DNA from: Sphyrna mokarran
Taxonomy: Eukaryota
NCBI GenBank assembly: GCA_024679065.1
Contig: JAGIQG010000006.1
Location: 8,308,001 to 8,372,000 of the forward strand
Direction of reading: 5' to 3'
DNA: 64,000 bases
Shown here: positions 9,557 through 61,836 of the stretch, one piece after another
Position numbering within the stretch: position 1 is the first letter of the stretch
Layout: each line of letters opens with the position of its first letter
The notes under the pieces: model-generated
The model's input: only the letters and a program-made list of their open reading frames with translations
The model's database searches: none
Told to the model about the DNA's origin: nothing
Made by a program: the position numbers and the translations under genes

Positions 9557-9625
9557 CTTTCTCTTGTTGAGACCTTGTGAAGTTTATAACCGCGTAATCT
9601 AGATTATTTCCAGCTCCTTGCAAAT
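9557..9625 (-). CDS. Gene A cytoplasmic exon 3 (69 nt) with ITIM: (D)LQGAGNNLDYAVINFTRSQQEK
   Basis: Long polypyrimidine tract ...ttattcctttggtag| acceptor and |gtaagg donor; LDYAVI fits ITIM (S/I/V/L)xYxx(I/V/L). Confidence 0.88.
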
Positions 9626-12600
9626 CTACCAAAGGAATAAAAGTAGAAGAAAAGATGGATGTTTATTCATGGAGAAGTATGGATGAAGTTAGGACAGTTT
9701 AAAACTCCTAAGCCAGGATGAAATAACTATGAAAGAATGTGGTGAATTACAATTTGTGATTGAGGATCAAACATGGCTCTTATAAACCTTTTATTATTGA
9801 AGTCTCTTCACATCTCCTGATTGGATTTGTCACTGACAATCTCACAATGCACCCGCATTCTGGTCTCCCCCACAAAATTAGCTAGAATAAATGCTGGCCC
9901 AGTTGATGACGCCCACATTCCTGAATAAATTAAAATAAAAAGGAATGACAGGAACTGAAGAAAAAACAAGCTTTGGACCAATCAAGGACATGAAGCATTG
10001 ACTGCTGAGTGAATTTGGGCAGTATTTTTGGTATCATATTTTGAACAGTAAATTGGTAAAGTATCCATCCATTGTACACGCCAGGAAGGCTGAGGTCAAT
10101 CCTTATTATTGACTCAAGATATTCCTGAATCAGCAACGAAGGCATGTAAACGGAATTAAAATACTAACCAGCCATGAATAGCCTTGAGGGGCTGAATGGC
10201 CTCCTCCTGTTCTCACATAGGGGAGCTATTTTAATTTGCATTATTGCAGATAAAGTGCAGCGACACAGTCTGACTTCTGTCTGGTATTTGTGGGTAAAAA
10301 TCCTGGAACTCCCTCCCTAGCAGCATTGTGGATGTATCTACACTGCACAGATTGCAGTAGTTCAGCATGGCAGCTCACCACCTCCTCCTCAAGGGACAAT
10401 TAGAGATGGGCAATAAATGCCAGCGATGCCCTTGTTCAGCGAAAGAATAACTTAAAAACCATGACCTATCACAGGCTTTTCATTTCCTCCCAAAGATGTG
10501 TGGGTTAGGTGGATTGGCCAGGCTAAATTGCCCCTTAGTGTCAGGATAAATGCATAGGATTATGGGGATAGGGCCTGGGTAGGATTGTGGTCAGTGCAGA
10601 CTGGATGGGCCGAATGAACTCTATGATTTTGTTCTTGCTCCTTACCCTTCTCCGTCTGTAACTTTTCCCCATCCTAATGAAAGGTCCTTGAGCTGAAATG
10701 TGAACTCTTGTCTTCAATCTCTGTTTCTGTTGATGCTATCTGACTGTTGGATATTTCTCGCATTTTCTTTTCTTTATTTTAAGCTTATAGTTTGTACTTT
10801 GAAGAATGTTCTCAATGCAAAGTGAGTTGTTTCTATACCTGTTTCCGCTTGCTGTGACGCTGGACCAATGGCACTGTAAACAGGAATCTCTCCAACTCCC
10901 TGTGGATCTGTCAAAGATACAGAAATGTCACAGAGTCAAGTGCTCTTCCCAATACTTTTTAAAGGTTGTAAGGTTTCTGGTGTCCACAACCTTCCCAGGC
11001 AGCACATTCCAGATTCTCACCACTCTCTGAGTGACAACATACAGCCCAACTATACAACAGGACTGTAGCCATGTTTCACCTCTGCAGCTCACCCCGGTTC
11101 CTACACTCCTCCAAGCCTGTCCTCTTGCATTCCCCAGTTTTCACCATTCACTATTGTCATCCATGGCAGCAGGCCTTTGTGCGTACAGTAGCATGGTGGT
11201 TATGTTACTGGACTAGCAATCCAAACTTTGGGATGAAGGAGTTCGAAGGCCTCTGTGGAATTTGAATTTAGTTAATTAAATACATCTGAAATTACAAAGC
11301 TAGTATCAGTAATAGTGGCCAGGAACTCCTGACTTCTTGTTAAAAACCCATCTGGTTCTCTAATGCCTTTAGAGAAGGAAATCTGTTGTCTTTACCTGGT
11401 CTGGTCTACATGTGACTCCAGAGCCACCGCAATGAGTTGACACTCAACTGCCTCCTGAAATGACACACAGTTTCAAGGGCAACTAGGGATGGGCAACAAA
11501 TGCTGTCCAGCAGCATTGCCCACGTCCCACAATTGAATAAAGAAAAAAATACGAACAAATGTCAACAAACGATGACCTTGTGACCCCACTTCCCATAGAA
11601 GAATGCCATGGAAGGATATTATTTGTGCGGTCACAACTAAAAAGCAGCTCCTCTCGGACAACTAAGGAAGACAATAAATGCTGGATACTTCTAGCATTTT
11701 CTAATTTTATTTTAAGCTTATCATAGAATTATAGAATATACAGTTCAGAAGGAGGCCATTCGGCCCATCGAGCCTGCACTGACAACAATCCCAAACAGGT
11801 CCTGCCCCATAACCCCATATATTTATTCTGCTAATCCCCTTGGACACCGAGGGCCAATTTTGCATGGACCATCTACCTTCTCCGCACCTTTTTGGACTGT
11901 GGGAACACACAGAGGAAACCCACGCAGACACGCAAACTCCATACAGTCACCCGAGGCCAGAATTGAACACAAGTCACTGTGCCACCATGTGGTCTCAAGG
12001 CTTGTACTTTGAAGAATGTTCTCAATGCAAAATGAGTTGTCTCTATACCTGTCTCTGCTTGCTGTGACGCTGGATTAACAGCACTATTAACAGGAATCCC
12101 TCCAACTCCTCGTGGATCTGTCAAAGATATGGAAATGTAAAATGGGATTCTTACAGAAATCAAAAGGAAATCAGGCATGCAGGATTTTTAACAGCCCAGT
12201 GCTTCACAGCACATGAATGAATTAAAAAAAAACTGGTGACCTAATACTCTCGAGTTCCCTCCCTAAACCTCGCAATCTCTCCTCAGCTATCCCCTCCTTT
12301 ATTAAATTCTTTCAAACATACCCTCTGACCAAGGCACTATTAGTTATATCATGTGGCGTAGTTTCCAATACTGTTAGATAATCGCTCCTGTGTTCTTATG
12401 TTAAAGCTGTAATATAAATACAAACTGTTGTTCGATGGAGGAGGAGTATGTGTATCTTTAGGTGGGAATTGTGGAACAGAATCAACAGAAAAAGAGCTGG
12501 AGAGGGTCAAAGCGCAAAGTGAAGGGCTTGAGAGCTCTGCAGAAAGAGCAAAATGAGGAAGATACAAGGCTCTGAAAACCAACCATTGGAAGGAACAATG

Positions 12601-15600
12601 TTTGTGAAAGTAGCTAGTCTGGAACATCCTTTTGGTGGAATTTCTCATGTCCCACCAGACATTTGCCTGTCCAAAGAGGCTCCATGTCAGGATCAAAGGC
12701 TGAGCTATTCGCCCTGAGCCCTCAGTGCCATCCAAACCTGGCACAGGAGTCTTCCCTTACCCACCTCCACTCCGTGGGCCACTTGCTCGGTAACATGGTG
12801 GTACAGGGGCATGGGTGGCACAACGGTTAGCACTGCTGCCTCACAGCGCCAGGGACCTGGGTTCAATTCCAGCCTCAGGTGATTTGTCTGCATAGGTTTC
12901 CTCCAACATTCCAAAGATGTGTGGGTTAGGTTGATTGGCCATGGTGAATTGCTCTTTGTGTTAGGGGGATTAGCAGGATAAATATTTGGGGGTATGGGGA
13001 AAGAGTCTGGACTGGGGCAGGTACAATGGACTGAATGGCCTCCTTGTGCACTGTGGAGGTTCTATGATTCAATGATGGACAGCAACACTACTAGGGTGGG
13101 TTCTATCTTGCAGAGGGGGGATTGGAGGGGATGGGGATGGGGTGGGTAAGGGTTGGTGCTTCGGACCTTGTTCTTTGGGTCAGATTTCATTTAACACACA
13201 CAGCAGACATTTCTGGCATTCATTCTCAGGGTATGGGTGAGGCTGGCAAGGTTGGCATTGACTGCCCATTCCTAGAAGGTGATGATTGAACTGTGGGCCT
13301 GCAGTTGAAGGAATTTGATGTGGGTTACATGAGAGAGATCAAAGTTTATTCTACATAACACCTCAATTGCAATTGAACTGCATCCTAGTACAGTAATCAT
13401 TAAAGTAAAGTTTATTTATTAGTGTCACAAGTTGACTTACATTAACACTGCAATGAAGTTATTGTGAAAATCCCCTAGTCGCCACACTCTAGTGCCTATT
13501 TGGGTACACTGAGTGAGAATTTAGCATGGCCAATGCACCTAACCAGTATGTCTTTGGACTGTGGGAGGAAACAGGAGCACCCAGAGGAAACCCACGCAGA
13601 CATGGGGAGAATGTGCAGACTCCACACAGACAGTGACCCAAGCTGGGAATTGAACCTGAATCCCTGGCACTGTGAGGTTGCAGTGCTAATCACTGTGCCA
13701 CTGTGCCACCCATTTGTGAGGGGAGAATTCTTACGTTTAAACTCATCGAAAGGCTAATGGAATGTTGAATTTACCTTAACCCAAGAAGTCTGAATTTCAA
13801 AGAAGTTTAGAGTTATGTAAAATTCAAGTTAACCACAGCTGGAGTAACTGGGTGGGATTTCACAGCCTTGCTCATCCCAAAACTGTAAAATCCTACCTGA
13901 GGTCAATGGCCGCCCCTCCAATGGCCTGCTCCAATTTTGATAGGGGAGGAGGTTAGGGGGAGATGGGCCGGGTGGTAAGATTTCAGTCACTCCGTTGAGT
14001 TCTGGGAACCCAGGAAGGATGTGTTGACCTTGGAAAGGGAGTACAGCAAAGATTCACCTGAATCATCTTACACATCCTTGTCAGAGCATGTGTTTGTATA
14101 GACTGGCTGTGATTAAGGGTTATCCAGATTTGAATCATTTCTATTCTCTCTCTGCAGATGCTGGCAGACCTGCTGAAATTTTTCGGCATTTCGCTTGTGC
14201 TGGTATAGCCTAGATTTGTGTTCCTTTGATAGAAGGTGAGTTGATGTGATTGAGATGGTTAAATGGTGGTTTGATATGAGAAAAAGAAACTATTTCCTCT
14301 AGACTGAGATGATTCTTATGGGAAGTGGGCAGGTAAGTGGAGCTGGGTCCACGAATAGATTTTATTGAATGGTGGAGCAGGCTCGAGGGAGGCCAAATGG
14401 CCTACTCCTGCTCCTAGTTCTTATGTTCTTATGTTGTTTATGATGACATATTGTGATATAATGTTTGAGATAACATTAAAGATCCTGTAGAAAGTTGTAA
14501 GATTAGCTTTTTTGTCAGTCACCCTTTTGCTAGTTCCAAATATTTTTCCCAAGCTACTGGGCTTCCTTTAATCTATGGAAACTAGACGATGCAACAAAAT
14601 TATCACCAATCCCTGACAGCAGTAGAATTTGTATTGTGAAGCTCACCTCTTTTCAACACCCAGATAACAAAACCAAATAGAAGAAAGGAGATAATGAACA
14701 GAGGGGGCACAATGTAATGGACGAGAGTGGACTTGTCCTTATCTTCATCAGGGAGGTGGATCTGACGGACATCTCTCCCGAGTTCATTTACAGCCAAACA
14801 GTTATACGTCCCTCTCAGTACTGGGTTACGAAACTCTCCTGTGATTTGATACTTGTCTGGCTCTTGTGTGACTGTTGTGTCAGGGCTGTTCCCGGGCACT
14901 GAGCTGCCCTCAGGATCGATCCATGTGATATTGGCAGGTGGCACCGCTTCAACCCGGCACACGATGCTCTCTCCAGTTACATTATCGCTCACTGTCGATA
15001 GATTCAAGATGGTGGCTGGGACTTGGGAAAGGAAAAGGACAATGAGGTTAATACCATTTATCGATCCTCACAGGAATATAGAACAGGGATTGGCCATTTA
15101 GCCTCTTCAGCCTGTTTAACCATTCAATAAGATGAGAAATGACCTGTGGCCTAGCTCCATTGAACTGTCTTTGTCCATATCCCTTATATGATAGGAAGAC
15201 AGGTTGTTACTTGAATGAGTGTAAATTGAGAAAGGTGGATACTCAGCGAGACCTTAGAGTCCTTGTGCATCAGTCACTGAAAATACCACTACATTACCAC
15301 TACACCAGAATCATCCCTTTGTCTCTTTGGACTCAACTATCTATTTCCAAACAGATGGAGGTTGGATTATAATATTCAGTGAGGAACCAGATCATCTTCT
15401 GCCATTTAGCTTTTAACAGTAAAGAAAACTATTAATCATGAAAAGTGTGACTAGAATATAACATTCCTTCATTCCCACTTATCTTCGTAAACGTTCAGCA
15501 TTTATAAGAATAACACTGATTACAGAAATATATTTTATGAGTATAAAGTTTAGTAAAGTATCACAGTCCCAATAAATCAAGGCTAAAATGTGATCAGACG

Positions 15601-18600
15601 CTCCCACACTTAAACCAAGGGTTTCGCTAATCTTGGCATGGATTGAATTAATCCGATTTTATCCATGGACGTTGACAGCCAAAGCAGCCAGGGAATGGAG
15701 GATAAAAGAGTCTCCTGAAGACTCACATGTTTCCCGCCGAGGAAATGACATCTCACCACAAGGTGGAAGATCCCCCACCTCTGCCCGTGTTGGTCACAGC
15801 AGCCAATCATTCAGTGTCTATTGACTCACTAGCTCTGTTTCCCCAAGATGTGGTCATTGGTACCAGGTTATTTTGTGTTTGTCTATAAAGGTTCACCTCC
15901 TATCTACAGCCCACTCGCTTGGAATTGACCTGATTTAACTTTTCACAGTGCAGAAGAGGGCATTCAGCCCTTAACAGCCACATGGACTTTTACCAGAATT
16001 AACGCAATACCCTCATATTTTACCCCTACCATTTTTGGGCGGCCAAAGGTTTCTTAAGTTCTGAATTTGATGGGAAAACTGTTGTAATTCAATGATTGAT
16101 TTTCACATTGCGAGTTTGACACTCGAATCTCCCACATTCTGTGCAAAGCAGCGTTCACAATCACGAATATCATTAAAAGTTTGGGGGGGTGGAGCCGATC
16201 CATGTAAAAGTCTGTCAGTTCTGGAACTCTGTGAAGGAGCAATGGCCCTGAGCTCTCAGCCTACAGTTTGCTGGCGGGCGATTGAGCTAACCAGCCTGGG
16301 GTCCTCACAGTGCTGCCCCTCCAGCCATCCGCCCACGGACTGATCGCGGACCCAACGAGAATTCATGGGCCAGCCTCGATCCTGTCATCATCCAAGAGTG
16401 CCGCAATCTCCACCCCCACCTACCCCCAGCAGTGACGATCCCTCTTTGGCAGATCCAGTCCCCTCGGGAGGCAGACCCCACTCAGCAGACATCCCACCTC
16501 CCAGGAGACCCCACTCCCAGCAGATTGCCCCACGGGAGGCAGACCCACCTGACAAAACACCCCTCTCCCCCTGGCTCGACCTGTTCACTGACCTCCCTCC
16601 AGCCCCAATCGATCACAACGCAGATTGGCAGTGGGATCCCCCCCATTCCCACCAATTGTCCCCTCGGCCCCACCCACTTGGCACAGCCCAGTAGGCCCTG
16701 CCCCTTGGCACTGCCGTGTGCCTGGTGGCAGTGTCAAGGTGTCCCCTGGGCATGGGCTCTTTGCCCCTTTGGCAGGTCCAGGTGACACAATCGGGAACTG
16801 TGATGATGCCCAAACCAGGGGGCAGCCCTCCCACCGTCCAACCCCCATGGGTCTCCAGCTACTTCCATGAAAGTGGGTGCTACTCTAAACCCCCCCGGAG
16901 TGAAGTTGTACTGGTGTTGGGAGTGGGGGGGAATGTTAGTGGGCTTGGAGAATTCAGTCCCAGGCCCCATTATCACATTTAATTAACATTAAAAATAGAT
17001 TTAAATCACTCACCTGCTGCTGCCTCTGGTTTCCATTGGGGTCCTGACTGCGCCAGATCTTCGGCGCTGGGTGATGTGTGTCTGTCAGGGACACACACGC
17101 AAATCCCGTGAATCGGTCACCAGTGATTCTCCCATCCCACCGGGCTAAAATTTAGGAAACTGGGGGGAAATTTAGCCTGGCCAATCCACCTAACCCATAA
17201 ATCTTTGGACTGTGGGAGGAAACCACACCAACACAGGAAGACCATCAAACTCCACAATGTATAAAATGATCAAAGCTGGAAATTGCCAGCACTGTGAGGC
17301 AGTAGTGCAAACCACTGTACCACCTGCTACAGAATGTTTTATCCACATCCCCATATCACAAACATTGATGTTTTCTTACCAACAACCTGGAGTCCCATCA
17401 CATCCTGAGTTACATTTTCCTGATTCCAGTTCCTGACGTGTACGTGACAGAAATAATCATTGGTGTCGTTCAGCTGCAGGTTCCTCATCCTGAGGGAAGC
17501 GTTTCCTTGGGTTGGGTTTCCAATCAGTTCATATCGATCTCCTTCATTCACAGTGACTGGGTCATTGTAGCCAGAACCAGCCCCCAGGGAATGAGAGTAA
17601 TTAAAAACAGTGGAAAATTTTTTTTGATCCCTCTTCATCCAGAGGACAGTGAGGGAGCTGAGAGAATGCTGAGGGGGATTGAAGGTGCAAGACAGAGTGA
17701 CAGAATCTCCCTTCACCCCAGTCACTGCCCGTGAATCGCTCTGACCTGAGGGAGTAAGGATTTGAAAGAACAGATATTAATTATCATGTAGTTTTATTAA
17801 ATGTAATCTCTACAATGTTTATCTCCCCTGTGATATCCCTAAAGACAGATAACACCGACCTAGATTTATACAAATACCTGGAAGTTAATGTTCCCTTCAG
17901 GAAATGAAGTTGGAAAAGTGCTGAGATCTTGGAGGGAAATTGCTCTGGAGGATGTGACGGCACTGAGATAGAAAAGGCCATGGAGGGATTTAAGGAGCAG
18001 GATGATGATGTTAAATAATGAGGAAATGGGTCTTGTTCCTCTGGAGAGGATTTCCTGCCGGGTCTGATGGACGATGTGATTGGTGGGATGAAAATGGATT
18101 GTGCTGGTGGCTTTTGGGACAGCATTGGGATAAAACCATGGATAAGTTATCTCAGCCTGCCCGTACTAGACAAAGACATACTCCCATTACTCTCAATATC
18201 TACAACTGTCCCCCTCATGGGATAGCATGGAGACACAGAGGTTAGCACTGCTGCCTCACAGTGTCAGGGATCTGGATTTGATTCCTGACTTGGGTTACTG
18301 TTTGTGTGGAGTTTGCACATTGTCTGTGTGGGTTTCCTCTGAGTGCTCCAAATTCTCCCACATTCTGGAAGATGTGCTGGTTAGGTGCATTGACCAGAAT
18401 AGGCTCCGGACTGTGGTGACTAGGGGAATTTCACAGTAACTTCATTTCAGTGTTAATGTAAGGCTTATTTGTGATTAATAAATGAACTTTAACTAAATTC
18501 ACAGCAGGCAGGACCCAGGCATTCACAAAGATGTAAATCTCAGTCTTGTACTTTCCCATTTCAAATCCATTTTACTCCAGAAAGCCAGTCTGTGAAGGAT

Positions 18601-21600: not shown

Positions 21601-24600
21601 GGGGCTGTTTAAGGGCCTCTTGGACAGCCACATGAGCAGTATGCAGATAGAGGGATATATTAGGACTGTTTAACTACGGCTTTTTTTCCACAGGTAATTC
21701 GGCCCATACTTGACCAACATTGAGCATGCATTCGGCAGGTGGTGCGGGTACAGCTCTTGGATGTTGATTCATGGGTTGCCTGGTACCTCATGTCGTAAAT
21801 GCGTGCTTTATGTGGACCATCTGAAGGGCACCATGACAGCTCAGAGACTATCGATGTGGCTGTGCAGACACTTGGAATTGGGCCGGTGTCTGCGGGAGTT
21901 TGCGCGTTCTCCCCGTGGTTGCGTGGGTTTCTCCGGGCACTCCGGTTTCCTCCCACAACCCAAAAATTCGCTCTTAGGCTGATTGGGTAACAAATTGTCC
22001 CTATAGTGAGAATTTTCCATATTAGGAATAATATATATATTATTATATAGGAATAATAAAATAGGATAATGGATTTGCTACTATATAGTTATGACGGCGG
22101 CGCGGGCTCGTTGGGCCGAAGGGCCTGTTTCCCGTGCTGTGTTGCTCTTTAAAAAAAAAAAGATGTCCCATAAATTTCCTGGGATGGACGATAAGAATAT
22201 AGAACATAGAACATAGAACATTACAGCCCAGAACAGGCCCTTCGGCCTTCGATGTTGCGCCGACCAATTATGAACAAAAAAGCAATGACCCTCCAAACTA
22301 AATCATTCCCTTCTCTTCCATAAACTTATCAACTAACCTCTTAAACGCCACCAAACTTGGCGCATCTACAACTGCCGCAGGCAAGGCATTCCACTCCCTA
22401 ACCACCCTCTGGGTAAAGAGTCTACCTCTGATATAACTATCAGCATTGCTCACAAACCAAGAGTAAACTCTTTATCATCAAAACCCGACAGCACAAAAGG
22501 AGGGCATTCAGCCCATCGAGTCTGCACTGACCACAATCCCATCTGTCCCTGTAACCCCACACATTTACTCCACTAATCCCTCTAATTTACACATCCCGGG
22601 ACACTAAGACACAATTTAACATGGCCAATGCACCTCTGTAGCACATCTTTAAAACATTTGTGCTTGTGTTTGGATTAAATTTACATACAGTCTTATATCG
22701 AATTTGAAATATTCCTCACCTCTCATTATGAGATCTCCATGCTCCAATTGATAAGCTGCTCCGTTACCATCGAGCTCCATGCGACAGAAATATTTATGTC
22801 TTGTGTCCTCTTTATTCAGCTGTTTGATGATGATTGAAGCTTCGTTCTTCCTCGGGTTTCCCAGCGCTTGGTAACGATTATTAATATTCAGGATGACCAG
22901 ATTCTGAAACTGTCTGCCCGGTGCGTTTTGTGTTGGATAATTTGTATAATTAAATACCGCTTCCTTTCCTCTGAACCATTTAACCGTGATGTTGCCATTA
23001 TATCCCGAGTGAGGGTGAGTGAACTTGCAGAACAGAACAGTAGCTTTTCCTTCCCTACCCGTCACCTTCTCCGGTGTCTCCATGCTCCAGCCATTGTTAC
23101 TGAGAACTGGAAAACACAAAATGCTGTTTAAACACCGAACTGAGATGGGAGCTGTTACGGGACTCTGTCGGAAGCTTTCTTGTTCTACTCCCCTCAACTA
23201 ACCAAACAAAGTGACGGAGTGATTTGAAGATGAACTTTACAATAGCTATCGGCCCCTGAATATCCATTCAGAGTAAAGAATTCAGAGATATAAAGGCAAT
23301 TAAAATCTCAGCTATGATTACAAATAATTAACATACACCAATAACAGAATATGAGTTATCTCCATCCAATCACAGTTAATACTTCATGTAACATCATATA
23401 AAATGTAATATTTAAAACCAATCACAATCATCTTACACTTGCTTAATTATAATATCCAACAGTGGTGAGCTTTTTACTGCCTGATTTGAGTATTATTCTC
23501 CCCTATCTTTACACACTTAGACTGTGTCTACACACTCCAACATCGGTCCTTGTCCAGTGCATGATGTAAAAGACTTCTCCCAGCACAGTATCTTTCTCCC
23601 TTCTTTACCTGAAGGTCAAACTAGTTTCTTGTAATAACCACCTTGTAATTACACATTGTGTAAGCTTTGTGATTTGTCCATGTTAATCCTTTCACTGAAC
23701 ACAGTTATTCATGTGCTGATTATTTTCCTCCATAATTATTAATATGGGTATTGATCCGCCTCAAGAGGCAATGGTTCCAACCCTTCAGGATTGGCCAAGA
23801 GTCTCCAGCCTAAGAAATTATGTACTTGCCACAGAGGAACATAGAACATAGAACATAGAACATAGAACATTACAGCACAGTACAGGCCTTTCGGCCCTCG
23901 ATGTTGCGCCGGCCAGTGGACCCTCTAACCTAAACTATTCCAGTATCATCCATATGCCTATCCACCGAACATTTGAATGCCCCCAAAGTAGGTGAGTCCA
24001 CAACTGCTGCAGGCAGGGCATTCCACGCCCTCACCACCCTCTGTGTAAAGGACCTGCCTCTGACATCCGTCCTATAACTACCACCTCTTAATTTAAAGTT
24101 ATGTCTCCTCGTGTTGGTCATCACCATCCGAGGAAGAAGGCTCTCACTATCCACCCTATCCAGTCAGTGAAGTGCAGTGAAGGTTCACCAGACCGATTCC
24201 TGGGCAGGCAGGATTGATGTATGAGGAGAGATTGGGGGGACAATTCACTGGAGTTTAGAAGAATGAGAGAGAATCTAACTGAAATTTTTAAATTCTAATT
24301 GAGCTGGACAGACTGGATGAGGGATAATCTTTGCCCTAGCTGGTGTCTGGAACAAAGGGTCACATTCTCAGGATGTAGGGCAGGCCATTTGTTTTATTCA
24401 TTCATGGGAAATGGCTTTCAATGGAATAACATTTCAGAGGAATGTTAGGAGTCCCATCAGTATGGATCTGGAGTCACATGTAGGTCAGGCTCGGGTAATG
24501 AGGTCAGATTTCCTTCCCTAAAGGACATGAGTGAATCCAATGGGTTTGTTTATGACAACCAACATGGTCATCGTTAGAGATTTAAATCCAGATTTTTATT

Positions 24601-27494
24601 GAAAAGGGTGAAACTTGTAAATGTTGATGTTCAGGGGACTTGGGAGTGCTCAGGATGGGAACACAGAAAGTTAGTATACAGGTCCACCAGCAATTAGGAA
24701 GGAAACTGACATGTTAGTCTTTACTGTAAGAGGATTGGGGTAGCAGAATAACAAAGTCTTGCAACAATGGGTGGGATTGCATCTAGAATATTTACAATTG
24801 TATTTTCCATATTTAGGAAGGATAAACTTATATAGGAGGCAGTAGCGTGAATGTTCACTAAATTTTTCCCTGGGTTGAGATTGTTGTGCTGTGGTATATA
24901 GAACATAGAGACTGAATAAACCAGCTCACTATTCTCTGGAGTTTTAAAGAGTAACAGGTTACCTCATCAATTGCTAGAAGATTGTGAAAGACGTTGAAAG
25001 GGTGAACGCTGAGAGATTGTTTCCCCTGACTGGGGGATTATTGTCTCACAGCGCCAGCAACCAAGGTTCAATTCTGGCCTCGGGTCACTGTCTGTGTGGA
25101 AGCTGTATGTTCTTCCCATGTCAGTGTGGATTTCCTCTGGGTGCTCCGGTTTTCTCCCACAATCCAAAGATGTGCAGGTTAGGTTGATTGGCCATAATAA
25201 ATTGCCTCTTAGTGTCAGGGAAAAAATACAGGATAAATGAAGGTTACGGAGATAGAACCTGAGTGGGATTGTGGTCAGTACAGACTTGATGGGCTGAATG
25301 GTCTCCTTCGGTACGTACGGATTCTATGATTCAACAAGGATAAAGGGCTGACTATTTTGGACAGAGATGAGGAGAAATTTGTTCGCTAAAGTGTCGTGAT
25401 TCTATGGGAATCTTTATGCCAGAGGGTTATAACTGCTCCTGAGCTGAATAAAGTTAACTCTTGGATAGATAGATTTTTGGTCCCTCGGGGATTAAGAAGA
25501 TTATTTCTTTTATTTATTATGTCACAAGCAGGCTTACATTAACACAACAATGAAGTAACTGAATTACTGTGAAAATCCCTAATCGCCACACTCCGGCGCA
25601 TTTTTGGGCACAATGAGGGAGAATTTAGCTAATGCACCTAATTAGCACATCTTCTACACTGAGGGACAATTTAGCATGGCTAATGCACCTAGCCAGCACG
25701 TCTTCAGACTGTGGGAGGAAACCGGAGCACCACAGACACAGGGAAAGTGTGCAGACTGTGCACATACAGTGACCCAAGCTGGGAATCAAACCCAGGTTGT
25801 TGGTGCTGTGAGGCAGCAGTGCTAACCACTGTGCCATCATATTACCCCATGGAAGTGTGTACTGCAGTCTAACTAGAGTGTGAAACAGTTTGTAATGTCA
25901 CTACCTGATAAGAAATAAGCCGGGGAAAGCCATTCAGCCCTTCAAGCCTGCTCCACCATTCATTAAGATCATGGCTGATCTGATTGTGCTCTTAACTTCA
26001 TTTTCCTGCCTGTTCCCACACCTTTGACTTGTAGGTTAAAAATCTGAATAAGCCTTGGCTACATTCAATGATTCAGCATCCACTGCTGTCTGGGGAGGTG
26101 AATTCTACAAACAAATGACCCTCGGAGAGAAGAAGTTCCTGCGCATCTCCATCTTAAACTGGAGACCCTTATTCTGAAACTCTGGCCCCTCATTCAAGAT
26201 GTGGGAAAAAACTTCCTCTCAGCATCTATAAGTCAGGCTCACACAGATTCTAATATGTTTCAAGAAGATCATCTTTCAATCTTCTAAACCCCAAAGTTAT
26301 CGACACAATCTGTTCGACCTTTCCCCAAAAGACCAACTGCTGAACCCCAGAATCAGCCCAGTGAATCTTTCTGGCACTTTCTTTGCGTCTGGAGTCACAT
26401 GTAGGCCAGGCTGGGTAAGGATGGCAGATTTCCTTCTCTAAAGGATATGAGTGAATCAGATGGGTTTTTACGTTAATTGATCTAGTCATCACTTGAGTTT
26501 TATTTCCAGATTTTTATTTAAAAAGGGTGCAACTTGTAAATGTTGATGTTCATGGACTTGGGGGTGCTCACATTGGGAACACAGAAAGTTAGTGTAAGAC
26601 CCACAAGCATTTCCTTTATTCATCAGAGACCAAAGTCTCTGACAGTGCGAGGGTAACTTCTCTCTTTCCATACTCTATATATCGACTAATAACACGAAAG
26701 TTTCCCATATACCTTCGCAATGATCTTATACCCCGGGCGATCTGATTTATCCTCTCATTGTAGTATCTTATGTTTGAGGGTTTTCATTTACTGCATTGTA
26801 AAATGTTCTTATTTGCAAAGGAAGCTAAAGCAAATACACAAATCTAACAACACTCATCCTTAACAATTCTTCTGACAGAACAGCCCCTGATCCAACATCA
26901 GTATAAAATTCAGCACAATATACAGTAAGATATTTAGTGTGAAAGCATTATATTCAGTGTCATATTGAGTATAATATTCAGCAATTGTCCATGTGTATTC
27001 TATATAATATTCAGAATACAATTCAATATACATTCAGGAACTGTAAAGTCATAATCGGCCACATGACCAGAGGCTGCTCTACCCTTTGAGTGGGAGAGCA
27101 GCCTGGTGATGATTTAACCTGAGGATCATTACATCTCAGCTGAGGGGCAAGGTTGAGAAGGCAGCGCCTTCATGAATAACCCCCGCGGGTACAGGAATTG
27201 AACCCACACTGTTGGCATAACTCACCAGATGGCCATCCAACTGAGCTGAACCAACCCACAGTAGCTTTGTTGGTATAATATTCCATATAATATGAAGTTT
27301 TATATTCAGCATAATATTCCATATAACACTGACAAGTCACTGTCCCTTCTCACTTGCGGTGAGCCAGTTTTTTTTGACACTCTAAATTATTTTACTGAAA
27401 TAGTATAGCAGAGGGAAAATGAGTTCATTCTTTAAAAATACATACATTTTGCTGAGCTGGTCAGTGTGAGTGTACACAGCACGATCCACAGCAT
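9557..27494 (-). CDS. Gene A: Siglec-15-like inhibitory Ig receptor (leader-V1-V2-C2/TM-tail x3), multi-exon, 3' end likely incomplete
   Basis: Exons 27494-27446, 23106-22720, 17745-17380, 15021-14647, 12117-12049, 10907-10839, 9625-9557 all have AG/GT boundaries, all phase 1, and join into one open frame of ~461 aa. Confidence 0.88.
10839..10907 (-). CDS. Gene A cytoplasmic exon 2 (69 nt): (D)PQGVGEIPVYSAIGPASQQAET, YxxI motif
   Basis: tttctgtatctttgacag| acceptor, |gtatag donor, phase 1-1; paralogous to 12049-12117. Confidence 0.78.
11190..11540 (+). mobile_element. Old SINE of a second family with a LINE-derived tail (related fragments at ~24450-24600, 26385-26520 and their duplicates)
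   Basis: aaaacccatctggtt...gaaggaaatctg...ctggtctacatgtgactccaga core recurs in the window; tail caagggcaactagggatgggcaacaaatgc shared with LINE 3' ends at ~10390-10420 and ~27740-27790. Confidence 0.65.
11722..11990 (-). mobile_element. HE1/V-SINE-type SINE
   Basis: ggactgtgggaa...gaggaaacccacgcagaca core and CR1-like 3' tail (atagaat)n. Confidence 0.82.
12049..12117 (-). CDS. Gene A cytoplasmic exon 1 (69 nt): (D)PRGVGGIPVNSAVNPASQQAET, Tyr replaced by Asn
   Basis: tttccatatctttgacag| acceptor, |gtatag donor, phase 1-1. Confidence 0.78.
12815..13072 (+). mobile_element. HE1/V-SINE-type SINE
   Basis: tRNA-like head gtggcacaacggttagcactgctgcctcacagcgccagggacctgggttcaattcc; tail ttctatgattc. 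Confidence 0.82.
13405..13708 (-). mobile_element. HE1/V-SINE-type SINE with alternative 3' tail
   Basis: tRNA head at 13650-13705, V core, tail ...gtgacactaataaataaacttt; same type at ~18230-18490 (+) and ~25505-25840 (-) and their duplicates. Confidence 0.82.
14647..15021 (-). CDS. Gene A C2-set Ig plus transmembrane exon (uncharged TM YIVPPLFIISFLLFGFVIWVL, then KR)
   Basis: IVC...ITW...GTYNC Ig motifs; acceptor ttttcctttcccaag| (alternative cag| at 15015), donor |gtgagc; 375 nt. Confidence 0.92.
16215..17165. repeat. GC-rich interspersed element in the V2-C2 intron, unclassified (copies at ~39965-40915 and 63615-64000)
   Basis: C-rich, low-complexity sequence producing spurious Pro/Gly ORFs; present in all three gene copies. 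Confidence 0.5.
17380..17745 (-). CDS. Gene A second V-set Ig exon (V2; YFCHVH, no essential Arg)
   Basis: VTLSCTF...VLW...GNASLRMRNLQLNDTNDYFC; tccttactccctcag| and |gtaaga; 366 nt. Confidence 0.92.
20114..22160 (+). mobile_element. CR1 LINE insertion specific to unit 1 (intron V1-V2 of gene A), with V-SINE core in its 3' UTR
   Basis: RT ORFs 20135-20674, 20640-21089, 21068-21673; empty site caggaagatgtccc at 43860-43873 in unit 2; short aaga target duplication and A-tract 3' end. Confidence 0.94.
22720..23106 (-). CDS. Gene A N-terminal V-set Ig exon (V1), Siglec-15-like, essential Arg in YFCRME
   Basis: WSM..P..V, VLFCKFTHPH..YNG, LGNPRKN, YFCRME, Y...HG match motifs recalled from the Siglec-15 V domain; tttgtgttttccag| and |gtgagg; 387 nt. 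Confidence 0.92.
23838..24163 (-). mobile_element. CR1 3' fragment (duplicate at ~45538-45850)
   Basis: TRRHNFKLRGGSYRTDVRGRSFTQRVV; (ATAGAAC)n tail is longer in unit 1. Confidence 0.88.
25045..25332 (+). mobile_element. HE1/V-SINE-type SINE (duplicate ~46732-47020)
   Basis: ctcacagcgcc...ggttcaattc head, V core, attctatgattc tail. Confidence 0.8.
27060..27260 (-). mobile_element. tRNA-derived SINE of a third family (related copy ~31235-31420; duplicates in unit 2)
   Basis: Minus-strand head agctcagttgg...ggttcaattcc (A/B boxes); core gatttaacctgagg..cacctcag..gagggg shared between copies. Confidence 0.7.
27446..27494 (-). CDS. Gene A signal-peptide exon MLWIVLCTLTLTSSAK
   Basis: ATG with purine at -3, hydrophobic core, 49 nt, |gtatgt donor, phase 1 in frame with V1. 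Confidence 0.88.
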
Positions 27495-27559
27495 TCTCTT
27501 CACTCCTGCAGTACACAGAGCTCTCTGAAGGCTCAGCACCCACTCGACGGGTCTAATAT

Positions 27560-36824: not shown

Positions 36825-37199
36825 CTACCGTCAACATCCAGATACTAAAACAAATTATAAAATATAAGATCAGTAAAAGAACCCGCACAACATAGGAAAC
36901 AAAAATGGACATGTCCTTGTCTTCAGCGATGAGGTGGATCTGACGGACGTCTCTCCCGAGTTCAGTTACAGCTACACAGCTGTATGTCCCTCTCAGTAGT
37001 GGGTTACGAAACTCTCCTGTGATTTGATACTTGTCTGGCTCTTGTGTGACTGTTGTGTCAGGGCTGTTCCCGGGCACTGAGCTGCCCACAGGATTGATCC
37101 ATGTGATATTGGCAGGTGGCCCCGCTTTAACCTGGCACACGATGCTCTCTCCAATTATTTTATTGGTCACTAACGACAGATTCAAGATGGTGGCTGGGA
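36825..37199 (-). CDS. Gene B C2-set plus TM exon (SYVVRVLLLILYFIICFSIWMLTV)
   Basis: Within ORF 36784-37440; donor |gtaagt; Arg codon CGG at 36883-36885. Confidence 0.92.
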
Positions 37200-49100: not shown

Positions 49101-49182
49101 GGGAAAATGAGTTCATTCTTTAAAAATACATACATTTTGCTGAGCTGGTCAGTGTGAGTGTACACAGCACGATCCACAGCAT
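36825..49182 (-). CDS. Gene B: Siglec-15-like activating-type Ig receptor (leader-V1-V2-C2/TM with TM Arg, short tail)
   Basis: Exons 49182-49134, 44806-44417, 41496-41131, 37199-36825, all AG/GT, phase 1, one open frame; no copy of the 69-nt tail exons seen downstream; last exon uncertain (read-through stop at 36784). Confidence 0.87.
41131..41496 (-). CDS. Gene B V2 exon
   Basis: 366 nt, 9 nt different from gene A V2, same splice sites. Confidence 0.92.
44417..44806 (-). CDS. Gene B V1 exon (YFCRME retained)
   Basis: 390 nt, one codon longer than A (DGKKG vs DGNG); ccag| and |gtgaag. Confidence 0.92.
49134..49182 (-). CDS. Gene B signal-peptide exon MLWIVLCTLTLTSSAK
   Basis: Identical to gene A leader exon; |gtatgt donor. 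Confidence 0.88.
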
Positions 49183-58759: not shown

Positions 58760-58967
58760 TCAGAGTGGATCATTCATTGGTTTTTTGCATTACGTTCCCT
58801 TCCTCTTGTGAAAGCTGCTGCCACCCTCTCCCAGGTAGGGTGGGTTACTTTCTGGAGGGGCTCCTGCCAGCCTGAGGGTATACCGTTACCCATCTTTCCT
58901 CCATGGAACCCAGCACAGGGGTGAGGGCCCCCTCTGTGAATCGAGGAGATGGTTTCCTGGCTGCCAT
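58760..58967 (-). mobile_element. Myb/SANT-like (NAIF1-type) second gene of a Harbinger element, decayed N-terminus
   Basis: MAARKPSPRFTEGALTPVLGSMEERW..YP..GR, then frameshifted W.RVA and CKKPMND resembling Myb/SANT W..VA...QCRKKxND. Confidence 0.6.
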
Positions 58968-59194
58968 CCTCCTGGACTGAATGAGAGCAAAAGGGTGGAG
59001 CTGTTTAAATGTTGATTGGTCTGCTCAGGTGATTGCTGGGGATTAGCGAATCAGACGCTTCGCTCCTCAGGTGTTTTCCCAGTGGGGAAAACATTTTTCG
59101 AAGCGGAGAATCCATATTAACACCAGCTGAGGTCCCTGGATTAGGGCAGCAGCTGCCAGGCCTGGCTCCTGTCTCTGTTAGTGGTGTCTCTACC

Positions 59195-59930: not shown

Positions 59931-61462
59931 CTCTGTTGGTGGGGCCTGAGATGGTCGTTCAGCCACCAGCAGAAGGTGGGAGTGGAGTGGGGGTGAGGAG
60001 GAAATGGCTGGGCAGAGGAGGAGTGTAATACAAGAAACTTAAGTCCCAAGACAGCATTGACCCCTGGTTTGAGGATCAGAGAGTGGCGAGAGCCCTCCCC
60101 ACCAGTCCCCTGCACCATCCCACACCACAGCAATGGTTGATGTTCCAACCCCACCCTGCTGCCCACTGGTGTTGAGGGGGTGGTGGTGGGGGTTGGTGCT
60201 CAATGGCACTCATCTCCTCACTTCTCTTCACTATGGCTCTACCTGATTCACATTGATACCAACATTAAGGACGTTTAAATGGTCATTGGATAAACATATG
60301 AATGCTACTGGAATGGTGTAGGTTAGATGGGCTTCAGATTGGTTTCATAGGTCCACGCAACATCGAGGGCCGAAGGGACTGCACCACGCTGTAATGTTCT
60401 ATGTTTTATTATGTGAACATCTTGCCGGGGAGATGGGAAACTTTTGGGGTTTCGGGGAGAGTGGGGGTGGCAGGGGGTTGGGGGGGTGAGGAGCGATGTT
60501 GTGTCAGACTTACTAATGATATTGCAATCCAGTTAAATTTATGCTAATTGGTTTTGATCAGTCTCTGGGTGTGAAGAAGTTTGTGCTGTTAAAAAGGGGC
60601 TGGGATGATCACAAATCATTTCATGATGGGCACAAATCAAATTTTTAGCATCTCTCGCTATTTTCCCAGCTCACCACACTGATCGCTGGGTGCAGTGAGG
60701 TGGTAAAATCACACCCTTAGGAATAGCTGTCATTGGGCCAAGTGTAAATATCTGATTCTTTCTTCTCAATAAAACAATTGAGTCTTTCTTTGCTCTTTGG
60801 CAATTAAACCACCCAAATTTACTGTACACAGGCTCCAACACATGTCACATGATCCTTTTCATATTACATTTAACTGCAGTTCTAAACTGTTATTCCTATT
60901 AAAGAAACCATATAGTGTGAAAGCATCACCATCCTGTACATTTCACAAATAAAGCACTAAAAAACAAGGCCTGCTGAATCTTTGCTTCTTCCACTCATCA
61001 GCACAGACACAAGAATACCAGATTTCAAACAGAACAACAACTTATAATGGAGGAAAAGAAGGATTCTGATTGGTTGAAGATTGTGTAAGACATATCTTAA
61101 ATGGATTGATGATTGAGAGTGAAATTTGCTGTATTTATGCTTTGCCGATTGTCCGTTGTCACAGTGGACTGGAAAGATTGTACCCAATGTTTCAAAACAT
61201 GAGATTTTGTTGGTAATTTCTTCATTTGGCCGTTGTTTGGTAAATTTAGTTATTTTGGTTTAACTTTGACCCATGGGTTTATAAGACAAAGTTATACAGG
61301 GCCACTGTAACAATTTGGTTTTTTGGATACAGATCAGCCAGGCTCTGATTGAAAAAGTGAACAGACCCGAGGGGCTGAATGGCCTCCTCCACAAAAACTC
61401 AAAGATTTCACAATATTACCATTAATCCTTCGCAGCAGTCACATTTTTATTGTGAAACTTAC

Positions 61463-61836
61463 CTACCGTCAACATCCAGATGCTAAAACAAATTATAAAA
61501 TATAAGATCAGTAAAAGAACCTGCACAATGTAGGAAACAATAGTGGACATGTCCTTGTCTTCAGCGATGAGGTGGATCTGACGGATGTCTCTCCCGAGTT
61601 CAGTTACAGCCACACAGCTGTATGTCCCTCTCAGTATTGGGTTACGAAACTCTCTGTGATTTGATACTTGTCCGGCTCTTGTGTGACTGTTGTGTCAGGG
61701 CTGTTCCCAGGCACTGAGCTGCCCACAGGATCGATCCACGTGATATTGGCAGGTGGCACTGCTTTTACCTGGCACACGATGCTCTCTCCAGTTACATCAT
61801 CGCTCACTGTCGACAGATTCAAGATGGTGGCTGGGA
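61463..61836 (-). pseudogene. Gene C C2/TM exon, frameshifted (rest of gene beyond window end)
   Basis: 374 nt vs 375 in A and B; actctc(c)tgtg 1-nt deletion at ~61654 splits ORFs 61631-61822 and 61422-61613; TM Arg replaced by Gln (CAG at 61521-61523). Confidence 0.75.

What the first reader, a model, noticed from the sequence alone, without database searches (positions are those of the whole stretch)
9557..61836. Paired inhibitory/activating Siglec-15-related receptor cluster in a probable shark
Seen: three tandem minus-strand Ig receptor genes. A and B share near-identical leader, V1 and V2 exons but have opposite signalling hardware. A has a neutral TM plus an ITIM tail; B has a TM Arg and no ITIM exons. 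Established: this is the paired-receptor design of SIGLEC5/14, SIGLEC11/16, LILRA/B and PILR, whereas mammalian Siglec-15 is a single-copy V-C2 receptor with a TM Lys for DAP12. V1 matches the recalled Siglec-15 motifs (WSM, CxFTHPH, LGNPRxN, YFCRxE, YxxxHG). Inference: an independently evolved paired sialic-acid-receptor system built from the Siglec-15 lineage rather than the CD33-related lineage. I know of no description of one but cannot check the literature.
Basis: partly seen in the sequence, partly recalled or inferred. Interest (0 to 1): 0.92.

Follow-up and report, generated by a model that had tools for sequence, protein, structure and literature searches.

The report
Shark Siglec-15-like paired receptor genes
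A shark-like genome carries neighbouring immune receptor genes related to Siglec-15 whose outer sensing parts are almost identical but whose signalling ends look opposite, a design known from mammals but built here from a different gene lineage.

Summary
On the minus strand lie two intact V-V-C2-TM receptor genes (A, B) and the 3' piece of a third (C).

- **Shared parts:** A and B have an identical leader exon. V1 differs at 5 bases plus a 3-base indel; V2 differs at 9 bases.
- **Signalling ends:** A has an uncharged membrane segment and three 69-nt tail exons; the last encodes a canonical ITIM (LDYAVI). B has an Arg in its membrane segment, and no tail-exon homologue lies downstream of it.
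- **Copy C:** it carries a 1-base deletion and Gln in place of that Arg.
- **Origin of B:** B is a hybrid, C-like below about 39900 and A-like above about 39950. One unequal crossover explains this.
- **Kinship:** V1's best solved relative is Siglec-15 (E 2.8e-18; CD33-type 1e-7), and the sialic-acid Arg is kept. Neither A nor B has Siglec-15's V-C2 build or its membrane Lys.
- **Not unique:** ITIM, membrane-Lys and membrane-Arg forms of this family stand as automatic predictions in many sharks, rays and a chimaera.

Six literature searches found no description. The scan holds unchecked notes on more such genes elsewhere in this genome. No RNA data were available, so splicing, B's 3' end, adaptor coupling and ligand remain inferred. 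Exons were searched one by one and never joined.

The parts
27446..27494 (-). Gene A leader exon (49 nt, ends in phase 1, donor GTATGT)
   Evidence: ATG-to-GT scan for hydrophobic leaders. Matches the leaders of family proteins P0171 and P0006 in tblastn. Identical to B's leader.
22720..23106 (-). Gene A V1 exon: V-set domain with the Siglec-15-type motifs and the conserved Arg (YFCRMEL)
   Evidence: Reading frame and splice sites. Pfam V-set E 2.1e-8. Best solved relative is Siglec-15 7zoz_A, E 2.8e-18. Arg column.
17380..17745 (-). Gene A V2 exon: second V-set domain, His where V1 has the Arg
   Evidence: Pfam V-set E 4.1e-19. Solved relatives: CD276 V domains (about 31 bits each) and Siglec-15 (35.9 bits). 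84% identical to V2 of Mustelus asterias P0166.
14647..15021 (-). Gene A C2-like domain plus uncharged membrane segment; donor G|GTGAGC
   Evidence: Ig_3 and I-set matches fall below Pfam's cut-offs. 58-60% identical to the ITIM-type proteins P0003 and P0172.
12049..12117 (-). Gene A tail exon 1 (69 nt, phase 1-1), Asn in the place of the motif Tyr
   Evidence: AG/GT scan. tblastn match to the tail modules of P0003, P0162 and P0172.
10839..10907 (-). Gene A tail exon 2 (69 nt), IPVYSAI: Tyr motif with Pro at position -2, not a canonical ITIM
   Evidence: 68% identical over 25 residues to a tail module of P0003.
9557..9625 (-). Gene A tail exon 3 (69 nt), LDYAVI at 9585-9602: canonical ITIM pattern. 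Ends in donor GTAAGG, so the gene goes on.
   Evidence: Match to the P0172 tail module (52% over 21 residues, E 0.087).
49134..49182 (-). Gene B leader exon, identical to A's
44417..44806 (-). Gene B V1 exon: 5 base differences from A, all changing the amino acid, plus one extra codon; Arg kept
41131..41496 (-). Gene B V2 exon: 9 base differences from A in 8 codons
39900..39950 (-). Crossover zone in B's V2-C2 intron: C-like on the 3' side, A-like on the 5' side
   Evidence: Three-way sliding-window identities.
36825..37199 (-). Gene B C2-like domain plus membrane segment with Arg (CGG 36883-36885). Donor G|GTAAGT; if unspliced the frame stops after 13 more codons.
   Evidence: 96% identical to C's exon region and 83-85% to A's.
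61463..61836 (-). Gene C C2-TM exon: 1-base deletion (opposite B 37017) shifts the frame; CAG (Gln, 61521-61523) in place of B's Arg codon. The rest of the gene lies beyond 64000.

Best explanation
The region is part of a tandem array of Siglec-15-family receptor genes with the build leader, V1, V2, C2-like domain, membrane segment.

Gene A is the inhibitory member. It has an uncharged membrane segment followed by repeated 23-residue tail modules. At least one is a canonical ITIM, which after tyrosine phosphorylation would recruit SH2 phosphatases (inferred).

Gene B is a recent hybrid. One unequal crossover in the V2-C2 intron joined the leader-V1-V2 half of an A-type gene to the C2-TM half of an older C-type gene. 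That C-type half has an Arg in its membrane segment and no tail exons. The older copy C has since picked up a frameshift and an Arg-to-Gln change.

B therefore shows nearly the same V1/V2 surface as A, including the Arg that Siglec-15 needs for sialic acid. It lacks the inhibitory tail, and through its membrane Arg it probably couples to an ITAM-bearing adaptor.

Shown: anatomy, kinship, hybrid origin, absence of tail-exon homologues after B. Inferred: splicing, B's short tail, adaptor coupling, SHP recruitment, sialic-acid binding.
For: - **Anatomy and A/B identity:**
- **Hybrid origin:** below about 39900 B matches C at 86-95 of about 100 positions per 100-column window and A at 74-86. Above about 39950 B matches A at 94-100 and C at 81-98 wherever C is still fully within the window.
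- **One duplication event:** the spacers are duplicated too (34033-35817 against 55581-57548, 92-95%).
- **Graded divergence A against B:** V1 and V2 differ by 14 bases in all. The C2 part has dS 0.11. The stalk plus membrane part has dS 0.53.
- **Tail modules:** they match those of RefSeq proteins of Heptranchias (P0003, P0162) and Heterodontus (P0172).
- **No tail after B or C:** tblastn with 20 family proteins at E up to 5 found no tail homologue downstream of B or C.
- **Siglec-15 kinship:**. Arg kept in A and B.
- **Same logic elsewhere:**
  - Heterodontus P0172 (ITIM tail) and P0165 (membrane Lys) are 92% identical over V2-C2 (163 of 177) and then unrelated.
  - Membrane-Arg forms whose models end in read-through after the TM exon occur in Rhinoraja (P0182) and Pristis (P0293); P0183 (Rhinoraja) also has the membrane Arg but runs on into the first exons of the neighbouring ITIM-type model P0171; the first half of the Mobula model P0002 also has a membrane Arg.
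- **B/C membrane segment:** it shares ICF-IW with the ITIM-type P0172. This fits descent from an inhibitory gene.
Against: - **No RNA evidence.** The run search gave 2 runs, each holding 0.05 of the words. Their contigs also cover non-exon stretches at similar depth and run unspliced through B's donor, so they look like DNA of relatives.
- **B's 3' end is open.** B's C2-TM exon keeps a strong donor, so it may splice to something not recognised.
- **Fusion in a relative.** The Mobula model P0002 joins a membrane-Arg copy straight to the next gene's V1.
- **Position of the Arg.** It has about 20 hydrophobic residues after it, so it could sit at the outer edge of the membrane rather than inside it.
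- **Adaptor unknown.** A 2014 survey (PMC4016189, passages read) found no FcR gamma chain in sharks.
- **No selection signal.** The excess of amino-acid-changing differences in V1+V2 (13 against 1 by the counts) is not significant by my rough hand estimate (about 0.13).
- **A's tail is incomplete** in the window.
- **Pfam** does not reach its cut-offs for the C2-like domain.
Confidence: 0.6

Rival explanations
1. B is only a by-product of unequal crossover. It would be a tail-less, signalling-dead or decoy copy (or a young pseudogene), and its membrane Arg would be incidental and bind no adaptor.
For: - Its sister copy C is already broken and has lost the Arg.
- C2 evolves about neutrally between A and B (dN 0.095, dS 0.113).
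- The Arg may sit at the membrane edge.
- No RNA support.
Against: - All four B exons are open with intact splice sites.
- Membrane-Arg forms recur in Rhinoraja, Pristis and Mobula predictions.
- A 156-base contig of run X1 covers 36871-37026 with 4 differences. Neither C's deletion nor a change at the Arg codon is listed in the printed tables, which are cut.
Confidence: 0.22
2. B (and C) are upstream exon sets that are transcribed through and spliced into A's exons. B transcripts would then also carry the ITIM tail, and there would be no opposite signalling.
For: - B's C2-TM exon ends in a strong phase-1 donor, and all downstream A exons are phase 1.
- The RefSeq model P0002 of Mobula birostris fuses two tandem copies this way.
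- P0183 of Rhinoraja runs from a membrane-Arg exon into the first exons of the next gene's model, P0171.
Against: - It would need an intron of more than 13 kb to A's V1, or 24 kb to A's tail, past A's own leader.
- Two RefSeq models of membrane-Arg forms (P0182, P0293) end by read-through just after the TM exon.
- Fused automatic models of tandem paralogues are a common artefact (my knowledge).
Confidence: 0.1
3. The family does not bind sialic acid; the V domains recognise a protein ligand. The pairing may still hold, but 'sialic-acid receptor' would be wrong.
For: - V2 is closest to CD276 (B7-H3) V domains.
- 9 of 12 membrane-Lys relatives have Leu at the Arg position, and both Mobula birostris copies have Gln. 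The Arg is thus dispensable in close kin.
- A passage of PMC7226832 says that cloned zebrafish Siglec-15 bound the tested glycans poorly.
Against: - A and B keep the Arg, as do 5 of 5 named ITIM-type rows and 17 of 17 bony-vertebrate Siglec-15 rows.
- The surrounding motif is Siglec-15-like.
Confidence: 0.3
4. The tandem copies are an assembly artefact, with haplotypes placed side by side.
For: Copies are 96-98% alike over more than 10 kb. No DNA reads of the source individual were available.
Against: - The copies differ in structure: a 2-kb LINE piece lies only in A's V1-V2 intron, a 2.9-kb piece only between C and B, and the C2-TM regions are 83% alike with unrelated downstream DNA.
- 2-4% divergence is far above usual heterozygosity (my knowledge).
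Confidence: 0.03

Closest known systems
SIGLEC5 / SIGLEC14 (also SIGLEC11 / SIGLEC16) paired receptors of primates (from my knowledge; not retrieved here)
   Same: - Neighbouring genes with near-identical ligand-binding domains kept alike by non-allelic recombination.
- One has an ITIM tail; the other has a short tail and a basic residue in the membrane segment.
- The hybrid is formed by unequal crossover.
   Different: - The lineage is different: here V1 belongs with Siglec-15, not with CD33-type Siglecs.
- The build is different (V-V-C2).
- The tail is made of repeated 69-nt exons.
- Adaptor and ligand are untested.
Siglec-15 of bony vertebrates (solved chain 7zoz_A; proteins named Siglec-15)
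   Same: V1 motifs, and the Arg reported as essential for sialic-acid binding (R143, per passages of PMC7226832). Best sequence match by far. Sister position in the V tree.
   Different: Siglec-15 is V-C2 with a membrane Lys for DAP12/DAP10 and no ITIM (PMC7226832, passages). A and B have an extra V domain and no Lys. A has an ITIM; B has an Arg nearer the outer end.
Membrane-Lys V-V-C2 proteins of cartilaginous fish, mostly named 'Siglec-15' by NCBI (P0164-P0166, P0168-P0170, P0173-P0175, P0009, P0006)
   Same: Same V1-V2-C2 build. V2 of A is 84% identical to Mustelus asterias P0166.
   Different: - They have a highly conserved membrane segment with Lys and a very short tail. In the profile search this Lys aligns with the Lys of the Siglec-15 chain.
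- 9 of 12 have Leu at the Arg position.
- V1 of A and B lies outside both of their clades.
ITIM-tailed V-V-C2 predictions: Heptranchias perlo 'Siglec-12' (P0003, P0162), Heterodontus francisci 'CXADR-like' (P0172), Pristis (P0167), Leucoraja (P0163), Rhinoraja (P0171), Narcine (P0176), Callorhinchus (P0294)
   Same: Uncharged membrane segment, the same repeated tail modules, and Arg kept in V1. Gene A is a member of this group.
   Different: - Only 51-60% identical to A.
- Their tails end in a conserved IYA-V exon that was not found in the window.
- None is described in a paper that I could find.
KIR, LILR and PILR paired receptors (from my knowledge; PILR-beta seen only as a weak hit, E 0.33)
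   Same: The logic of inhibitory and activating twins, with the activating form derived from an inhibitory gene.
   Different: Unrelated Ig lineages and different ligands.

Membership tests
Siglec family | N-terminal V-set Ig domain | tested here: met
   Pfam V-set E 2.1e-8, 34.8 bits against a cut-off of 26.
Siglec family | Conserved Arg on the F strand that binds the sialic-acid carboxylate | tested here: met
   The Arg of YFCRMEL aligns with the Arg of the YFCRVEF stretch of 7zoz_A, and with Arg in 17 of 17 bony-vertebrate Siglec-15 rows. That this Arg is the essential one is taken from passages of PMC7226832.
Siglec family | Binds sialylated glycans | not testable with these tools
   Needs a glycan array or cell binding with an Arg-to-Ala control.
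Siglec family | V domain closer to Siglecs than to other V-set families | tested here: met
   The 13 best solved chains are all Siglecs. The first non-Siglec is TIM-3 at E 4.7e-3.
Siglec-15 (orthologue) | Two-domain ectodomain, V then C2 | tested here: not met
   A second V-set exon lies between V1 and the C2-like exon in A and B.
Siglec-15 (orthologue) | Lys in the membrane segment (DAP12/DAP10 site) | tested here: not met
   A has no basic residue there other than one His. B has Arg at a different depth. The Lys is present in a separate set of cartilaginous-fish proteins.
Siglec-15 (orthologue) | Short tail without ITIM | tested here: not met
   A has tail exons with LDYAVI. For B the tail is unknown.
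Siglec-15 lineage (wider kinship) | V1 groups with Siglec-15 V domains and not with CD33-type Siglecs | tested here: met
   Careful tree of 46 rows: cartilaginous-fish V1 (support 86/62) is sister to bony-vertebrate Siglec-15 (90/90), with CD33-type rows outside (93/95). Support is moderate, and no non-Siglec V families were in the tree.
CD33-related Siglecs | V domain of the CD33 type | tested here: not met
   CD33 and Siglec-8 score about 33 bits against 69 for Siglec-15. They are the outgroup.
Paired inhibitory/activating receptors | Linked genes with near-identical ligand-binding domains | tested here: met
   Leader 0 differences, V1 5 bases plus one codon, V2 9 bases. The genes lie 21.7 kb apart.
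Paired inhibitory/activating receptors | One member with a cytoplasmic ITIM | tested here: met
   LDYAVI stands in a phase-1 exon with good splice sites. The modules are homologous to tails of RefSeq proteins. Met at the level of sequence only; the splicing was not seen.
Paired inhibitory/activating receptors | Other member with a charged membrane residue and a short tail without ITIM | tested here: inconclusive
   Arg is present, and there is no tail homologue downstream. But the exon keeps a strong donor, and no transcript was available.
Paired inhibitory/activating receptors | Activating member associates with an ITAM adaptor | not testable with these tools
   Needs co-precipitation. Which adaptors sharks have was not examined here.
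Paired inhibitory/activating receptors | Ectodomains kept alike by non-allelic recombination | tested here: met
   Switch of B's likeness from C to A at 39900-39950.

The most novel reading that the evidence does not exclude
Cartilaginous fish keep an old, three-way signalling family built on the Siglec-15 lineage.
- An ITIM branch has retained the sialic-acid Arg.
- A membrane-Lys branch (the true Siglec-15 counterpart) has lost that Arg in most sharks and rays.
- Membrane-Arg 'activating twins' are made again and again from inhibitory genes by unequal crossover, as caught here almost in the act.

On this reading the single activating Siglec-15 of mammals is the orphan of an ancestral paired family. 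Sharks would run a Siglec-5/14-style contest with sialic-acid-bearing pathogens on a different gene lineage.
Probability: 0.35. Interest if true: 0.75.

Novelty: new variant of a known kind. Interest (0 to 1): 0.55.

Why it matters
Paired inhibitory/activating receptors are read as footprints of host-pathogen contests. In the Siglec field they are known from the fast-evolving CD33-related genes of mammals, while Siglec-15 is treated as a conserved, single, activating receptor.

This locus shows the Siglec-15 lineage itself making an inhibitory form and a charged-membrane twin, and the recombination joint that made the twin is still readable. Related predictions in other sharks, rays and a chimaera suggest that the inhibitory form is old.

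If transcripts and binding confirm it, two things follow. The origin of inhibitory sialic-acid sensing would move to the base of jawed vertebrates. It would also give a natural system for asking which adaptor a shark membrane Arg uses.

It is a variant of a known design rather than a new principle, and gene models of the family already stand in public databases under mixed names.

Tried and rejected
**RNA evidence.** The one run search (on 36400-37200) listed 2 runs with 0.05 of the words, neither on record as RNA. Laying them on 31400-37350 gave mostly high-copy repeats, plus a few low-depth contigs that also cover non-exon DNA. I read them as DNA of relatives, so they say nothing on splicing.

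**Last exon of A.** A pattern search for the family's closing IYA-V motif and tblastn with 20 family proteins found nothing below 9557. That stretch is full of LINE pieces, so the exon probably lies before the window's start.

**First leader scan.** One search used too strict a filter and found nothing. One search found the leader.

**Alignment A1.** In one search the one-V Siglec-15 proteins were misaligned onto V2, so I dropped it and used A2.

**Positive selection on V1/V2.** All 5 V1 differences and 8 of 9 V2 steps change the amino acid. With 14 changes this is not significant by my hand estimate, so I make no claim.

**Gene conversion alone as B's origin.** Rejected in favour of one unequal crossover, because the spacers are duplicated at the same likeness. 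The two cannot be fully told apart.

**Literature.**
- Six searches found no paper on ITIM-bearing or paired Siglec-15 relatives in cartilaginous fish.
- I read passages only of PMC7226832, PMC8455134 and PMC4016189; the others I saw only as listings.
- Supplements are closed. Supplementary file 9 of PMC8455134 (whale shark gene families) might list such genes.

**A slip in my notebook.** Entry 2 gives 9 of 13 and 20 rows for the Arg column. One search shows 9 of 12 and 17 of 17.

**Rows left out.**
- The tree used 56 proteins that I picked from the 290 then stored. One (P0116) gave no domain, and one short domain (P0177 d1) was dropped.
- One search used 46 of those 111 rows.

Full report
**What is there.** A self-comparison of the window shows a tandem unit of about 21.7 kb.
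- 22160-33897 matches 43864-55580 at 97.7% over 11,753 bases.
- 15640-20113 matches 39404-43867 at 96.4%.
- 35835-37274 matches 60474-61911 at 96.3%.
- The spacers 34033-35817 and 55581-57548 match at 92-95%.
- In contrast, 14594-15167 matches 36772-37347 at only 83.3%, and nothing downstream of 14594 resembles anything downstream of 36772.

The window has no N.

**Exons.** I read the minus strand in three frames, placed the exons with coordinate scripts and checked the splice sites.
- Gene A: leader 27446-27494, V1 22720-23106, V2 17380-17745, C2-TM 14647-15021, and three 69-nt exons at 12049-12117, 10839-10907 and 9557-9625.
- Gene B: leader 49134-49182, V1 44417-44806, V2 41131-41496, C2-TM 36825-37199.
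- Gene C: only its C2-TM exon, 61463-61836, and part of the intron before it.

All internal exons are phase 1 with AG/GT borders.

**The contrast between A and B.**
- The leaders are identical. V1 differs at 5 bases plus one extra codon in B. V2 differs at 9 bases. The C2-TM exon differs at 58 of 375 bases.
- A's membrane segment has no Lys, Arg, Asp or Glu. B's has an Arg (CGG, 36883-36885), about seven residues into the hydrophobic stretch.
- A's three tail exons encode 23-residue modules. The first has Asn where the Tyr would be, the second has IPVYSAI (Pro at position -2, so not canonical), and the third has LDYAVI, which fits the ITIM pattern.
- The third exon ends in a good donor, so A goes on. 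I did not find its end in the window; positions 1-9400 are mostly LINE pieces.
- tblastn with 20 family proteins at E up to 5 found tail homologues only at A's three exons. None lies downstream of B or C.
- B's exon ends in G|GTAAGT. If unspliced, the frame closes after 13 codons. A and C behave alike at that spot.

**C is broken.** Compared with B it lacks one base (opposite B 37017), which shifts the frame inside the C2-like domain. It has CAG (Gln) where B has CGG (Arg); this is a G-to-A change in a CpG.

**B is a hybrid.** I aligned the V2-C2 introns of A, B and C and scanned them in 100-column windows.
- From 39518 to about 39900, B agrees with C at 86-95 positions and with A at 74-86.
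- From about 39950 upward, B agrees with A at 94-100 positions. It agrees with C at 81-98 where C is still fully in the window.

Together with the duplicated spacers, this fits one unequal crossover between an A-type and a C-type gene. The result is the order C, then B (A-like 5' half, C-like 3' half), then A.

Divergence between A and B is graded.
- V2: pS 0.012.
- C2 part: dS 0.113, dN 0.095.
- Stalk plus membrane part: dS 0.53, dN 0.44.

So the two kinds of membrane segment are old and the shared V half is young. B/C's membrane segment shares the stretch ICF-IW with the ITIM-type protein P0172, which suggests descent from an inhibitory gene.

**What family.**
- Pfam calls V1 and V2 V-set (E 2.1e-8 and 4.1e-19). 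The third domain scores as Ig_3/I-set below the cut-offs.
- Against solved structures, V1's best match is Siglec-15 (7zoz_A, E 2.8e-18, 69 bits). Then come Siglec-8 and CD33 (about 1e-7), Siglec-5, -10 and -7, and only then TIM-3 (4.7e-3), pIgR (0.025) and PILR-beta (0.33).
- V2 matches CD276 V domains (two stretches of about 31 bits) and Siglec-15 (35.9 bits). It has His at the Arg place.

**Relatives.**
- A scan of 1.84 billion representatives with V1 gave 149 proteins at E up to 1e-3 and 8 at up to 1e-30. None is more than 46% identical over the matched stretches.
- Names from the sources show automatic predictions from sharks, rays, Callorhinchus, a lungfish and a newt. They are called Siglec-15, Siglec-12, CXADR-like, CD276 homologue or uncharacterised.

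Their ends fall into three kinds.
- **(i) Membrane Lys.** A nearly invariant membrane segment with Lys and a tail of a few residues, in 13 listed proteins of sharks, rays and Callorhinchus.
- **(ii) ITIM tail.** An uncharged segment and a tail of the same repeated modules as A. Where the model is complete the tail ends in an IYA-V motif. Seen in Heptranchias, Heterodontus, Narcine, Rhinoraja and the second half of the Mobula model. The Pristis, Leucoraja and Callorhinchus tails carry related Tyr motifs.
- **(iii) Membrane Arg.** An Arg in the membrane segment in Rhinoraja P0182 and P0183, Pristis P0293, and the first half of Mobula P0002. The models of P0182 and P0293 end by read-through just after the TM exon; P0183 instead runs on into the first exons of the neighbouring model P0171.

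A belongs to kind (ii) and B resembles kind (iii). The closest protein is Mustelus asterias P0166 of kind (i): V2 84%, C2 80% to A but 63% to B, V1 only 54-58%. This supports 'a shark', though not this species.

**Is it Siglec-15 kin?**
- A profile of 24 rows (A2) hits Siglec-15 at 9.2e-41. The next hits are titin 4e-21, CD276 2e-20 and CD33 2e-12. The family's Lys aligns with the Lys in the Siglec-15 chain.
- A quick tree of 111 V-domain rows puts V1 of A and B in a cartilaginous-fish V1 group (support 84), and V2 in a separate group (99).
- A careful tree of 46 of those rows gives cartilaginous-fish V1 (86/62) as sister to bony-vertebrate Siglec-15 V (90/90), with CD33-type rows outside (93/95).
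- A and B sit on their own long branch (0.57), outside both membrane-Lys clades. Their place among the ITIM forms is unresolved.
- No non-Siglec V families were in these trees, so the exclusion of such families rests.

**The Arg column.**
- Arg: A and B; 5 of 5 named ITIM rows; both V1-type Amblyraja rows; 17 of 17 bony-vertebrate Siglec-15 rows.
- Gln: both Mobula birostris copies.
- Among 12 membrane-Lys rows: Leu in 9, Arg in 2 (Mustelus, Callorhinchus P0006), Trp in 1.

That this Arg (R143) and the membrane Lys define Siglec-15 function is taken from passages of PMC7226832.

**The same logic elsewhere.** Heterodontus P0172 (ITIM) and P0165 (Lys) are identical at 163 of 177 residues over V2-C2 and then unrelated. 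P0183 runs from a membrane-Arg exon into the first exons of the ITIM gene model P0171, and P0002 fuses an Arg copy to an ITIM copy. In two rays, therefore, an Arg gene also lies just upstream of an ITIM gene. These are automatic models, not experiments.

**What could not be shown.**
- No RNA run holds the locus. The two runs laid gave contigs that look like DNA of relatives. One of 641 bases runs unspliced from 37054 to 36418 with 59 differences and 3 gaps. One of 156 bases covers 36871-37026 with 4 differences.
- Adaptor, phosphatase and ligand are inferences from how such receptors work in mammals.
- A 2014 survey found no FcR gamma chain in sharks (PMC4016189, passages read), so the partner of the Arg is open.

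**Literature.** Six searches gave no paper on ITIM-bearing or paired Siglec-15 relatives in cartilaginous fish. PMC7226832 treats fish Siglec-15 as one conserved activating receptor and does not mention cartilaginous fish (0 occurrences of the terms). PMC8455134 mentions Siglecs once, in a list. Supplements were closed.

**Earlier notes of this scan.**
- Those on this window gave me the lead to the three 69-nt exons and to the crossover; I tested both.
- Notes on other windows of the same genome speak of more V-V Siglec-15-like genes from about 277 kb before this window to about 38 kb beyond it. I could not test these.

**Verdict.** It needs four corrections: two intact genes plus a broken one, not an orthologue of Siglec-15, B a recent hybrid, and a family-wide design rather than a private one. 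It is a new variant of the known paired-receptor design, undescribed in the papers I could search but present as unnamed or misnamed predictions in public protein sets.

Noticed in passing
window 20113-22160 (LINE match 20134-21679, + strand); also 135-1826, 7097-7978: LINE reverse-transcriptase pieces (Pfam RVT_1, E 1.8e-32, 5e-24, 3.4e-13). The one at 20134-21679 sits in A's V1-V2 intron and is absent from the matching place in B (43864-43867), so it was inserted after the duplication. Positions 1-9400 are mostly such pieces.
   Followed up: partly
window 57548-60474: About 2.9 kb between C and B has no counterpart in the matching B-A spacer (35817-35835). It is either an insertion here or a deletion there. 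Its ORFs have no Pfam match (one tested, 58331-58711).
   Followed up: partly
window 12048-11987 and 10838-10810 (minus strand): Just after tail exons 1 and 2 the frame reads on into a stretch that weakly resembles the third tail module of P0172 and P0003 (39-47% identity in tblastn, E 0.01-0.3). It lacks the Tyr and a clear acceptor, so it may be a decayed module. Exons 1 and 2 with their flanks look like a local duplication.
   Followed up: no
window 14646-14603, 36824-36786, 61462-61424 (minus strand): After the C2-TM donor the frame stays open for 13-14 codons in A, B and C, with similar residues. The RefSeq models P0182 (Rhinoraja) and P0293 (Pristis) end in the same kind of read-through. 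This hints at a conserved short-tail isoform made by not splicing. AATAAA lies at 36813 and ATTAAA at 36464.
   Followed up: partly
related proteins, not in the window: Most membrane-Lys 'Siglec-15' predictions of sharks and rays (9 of 12 rows) have Leu at the sialic-acid Arg position, while the ITIM forms keep Arg. The presumed true Siglec-15 counterpart may no longer bind sialic acid in these animals.
   Followed up: partly
window 31599-31996 and 32992-34185: Very high summed contig depth (thousands) in both laid runs, with many joints. These are high-copy interspersed repeats shared with the organisms of runs X1 and X2. Short ORFs with a recurring LLPHS...GFLPQSKDV-like peptide occur at many places in the window (for example 18227-18439, 25625-25840, 31625-31942).
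   Followed up: no
window 16365-16982 and 40115-40732: A G+C-rich stretch (about 0.51) in the V2-C2 intron of A and B carries long overlapping proline-rich ORFs on both strands. It is nearly identical in the two copies and its nature is unknown.
   Followed up: no
window 36871-37026 (run X1): A 156-base contig of another sample matches B's membrane-segment exon with 4 differences. Three of them are the letters that C has (36903, 36905, 36973). Neither C's 1-base deletion nor a change at the Arg codon is listed in the printed tables, which are cut. An intact Arg-type exon may exist in that sample.
   Followed up: no
related proteins P0007 (lungfish) and P0013 (Pleurodeles): The lungfish 'Siglec-15' has two V domains, a membrane Lys and a tail with STYENV. 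The newt 'Siglec-12 X4' has two Siglec-15-like V domains and several ITIM-like motifs. Tail-bearing Siglec-15 relatives are thus not confined to cartilaginous fish.
   Followed up: no
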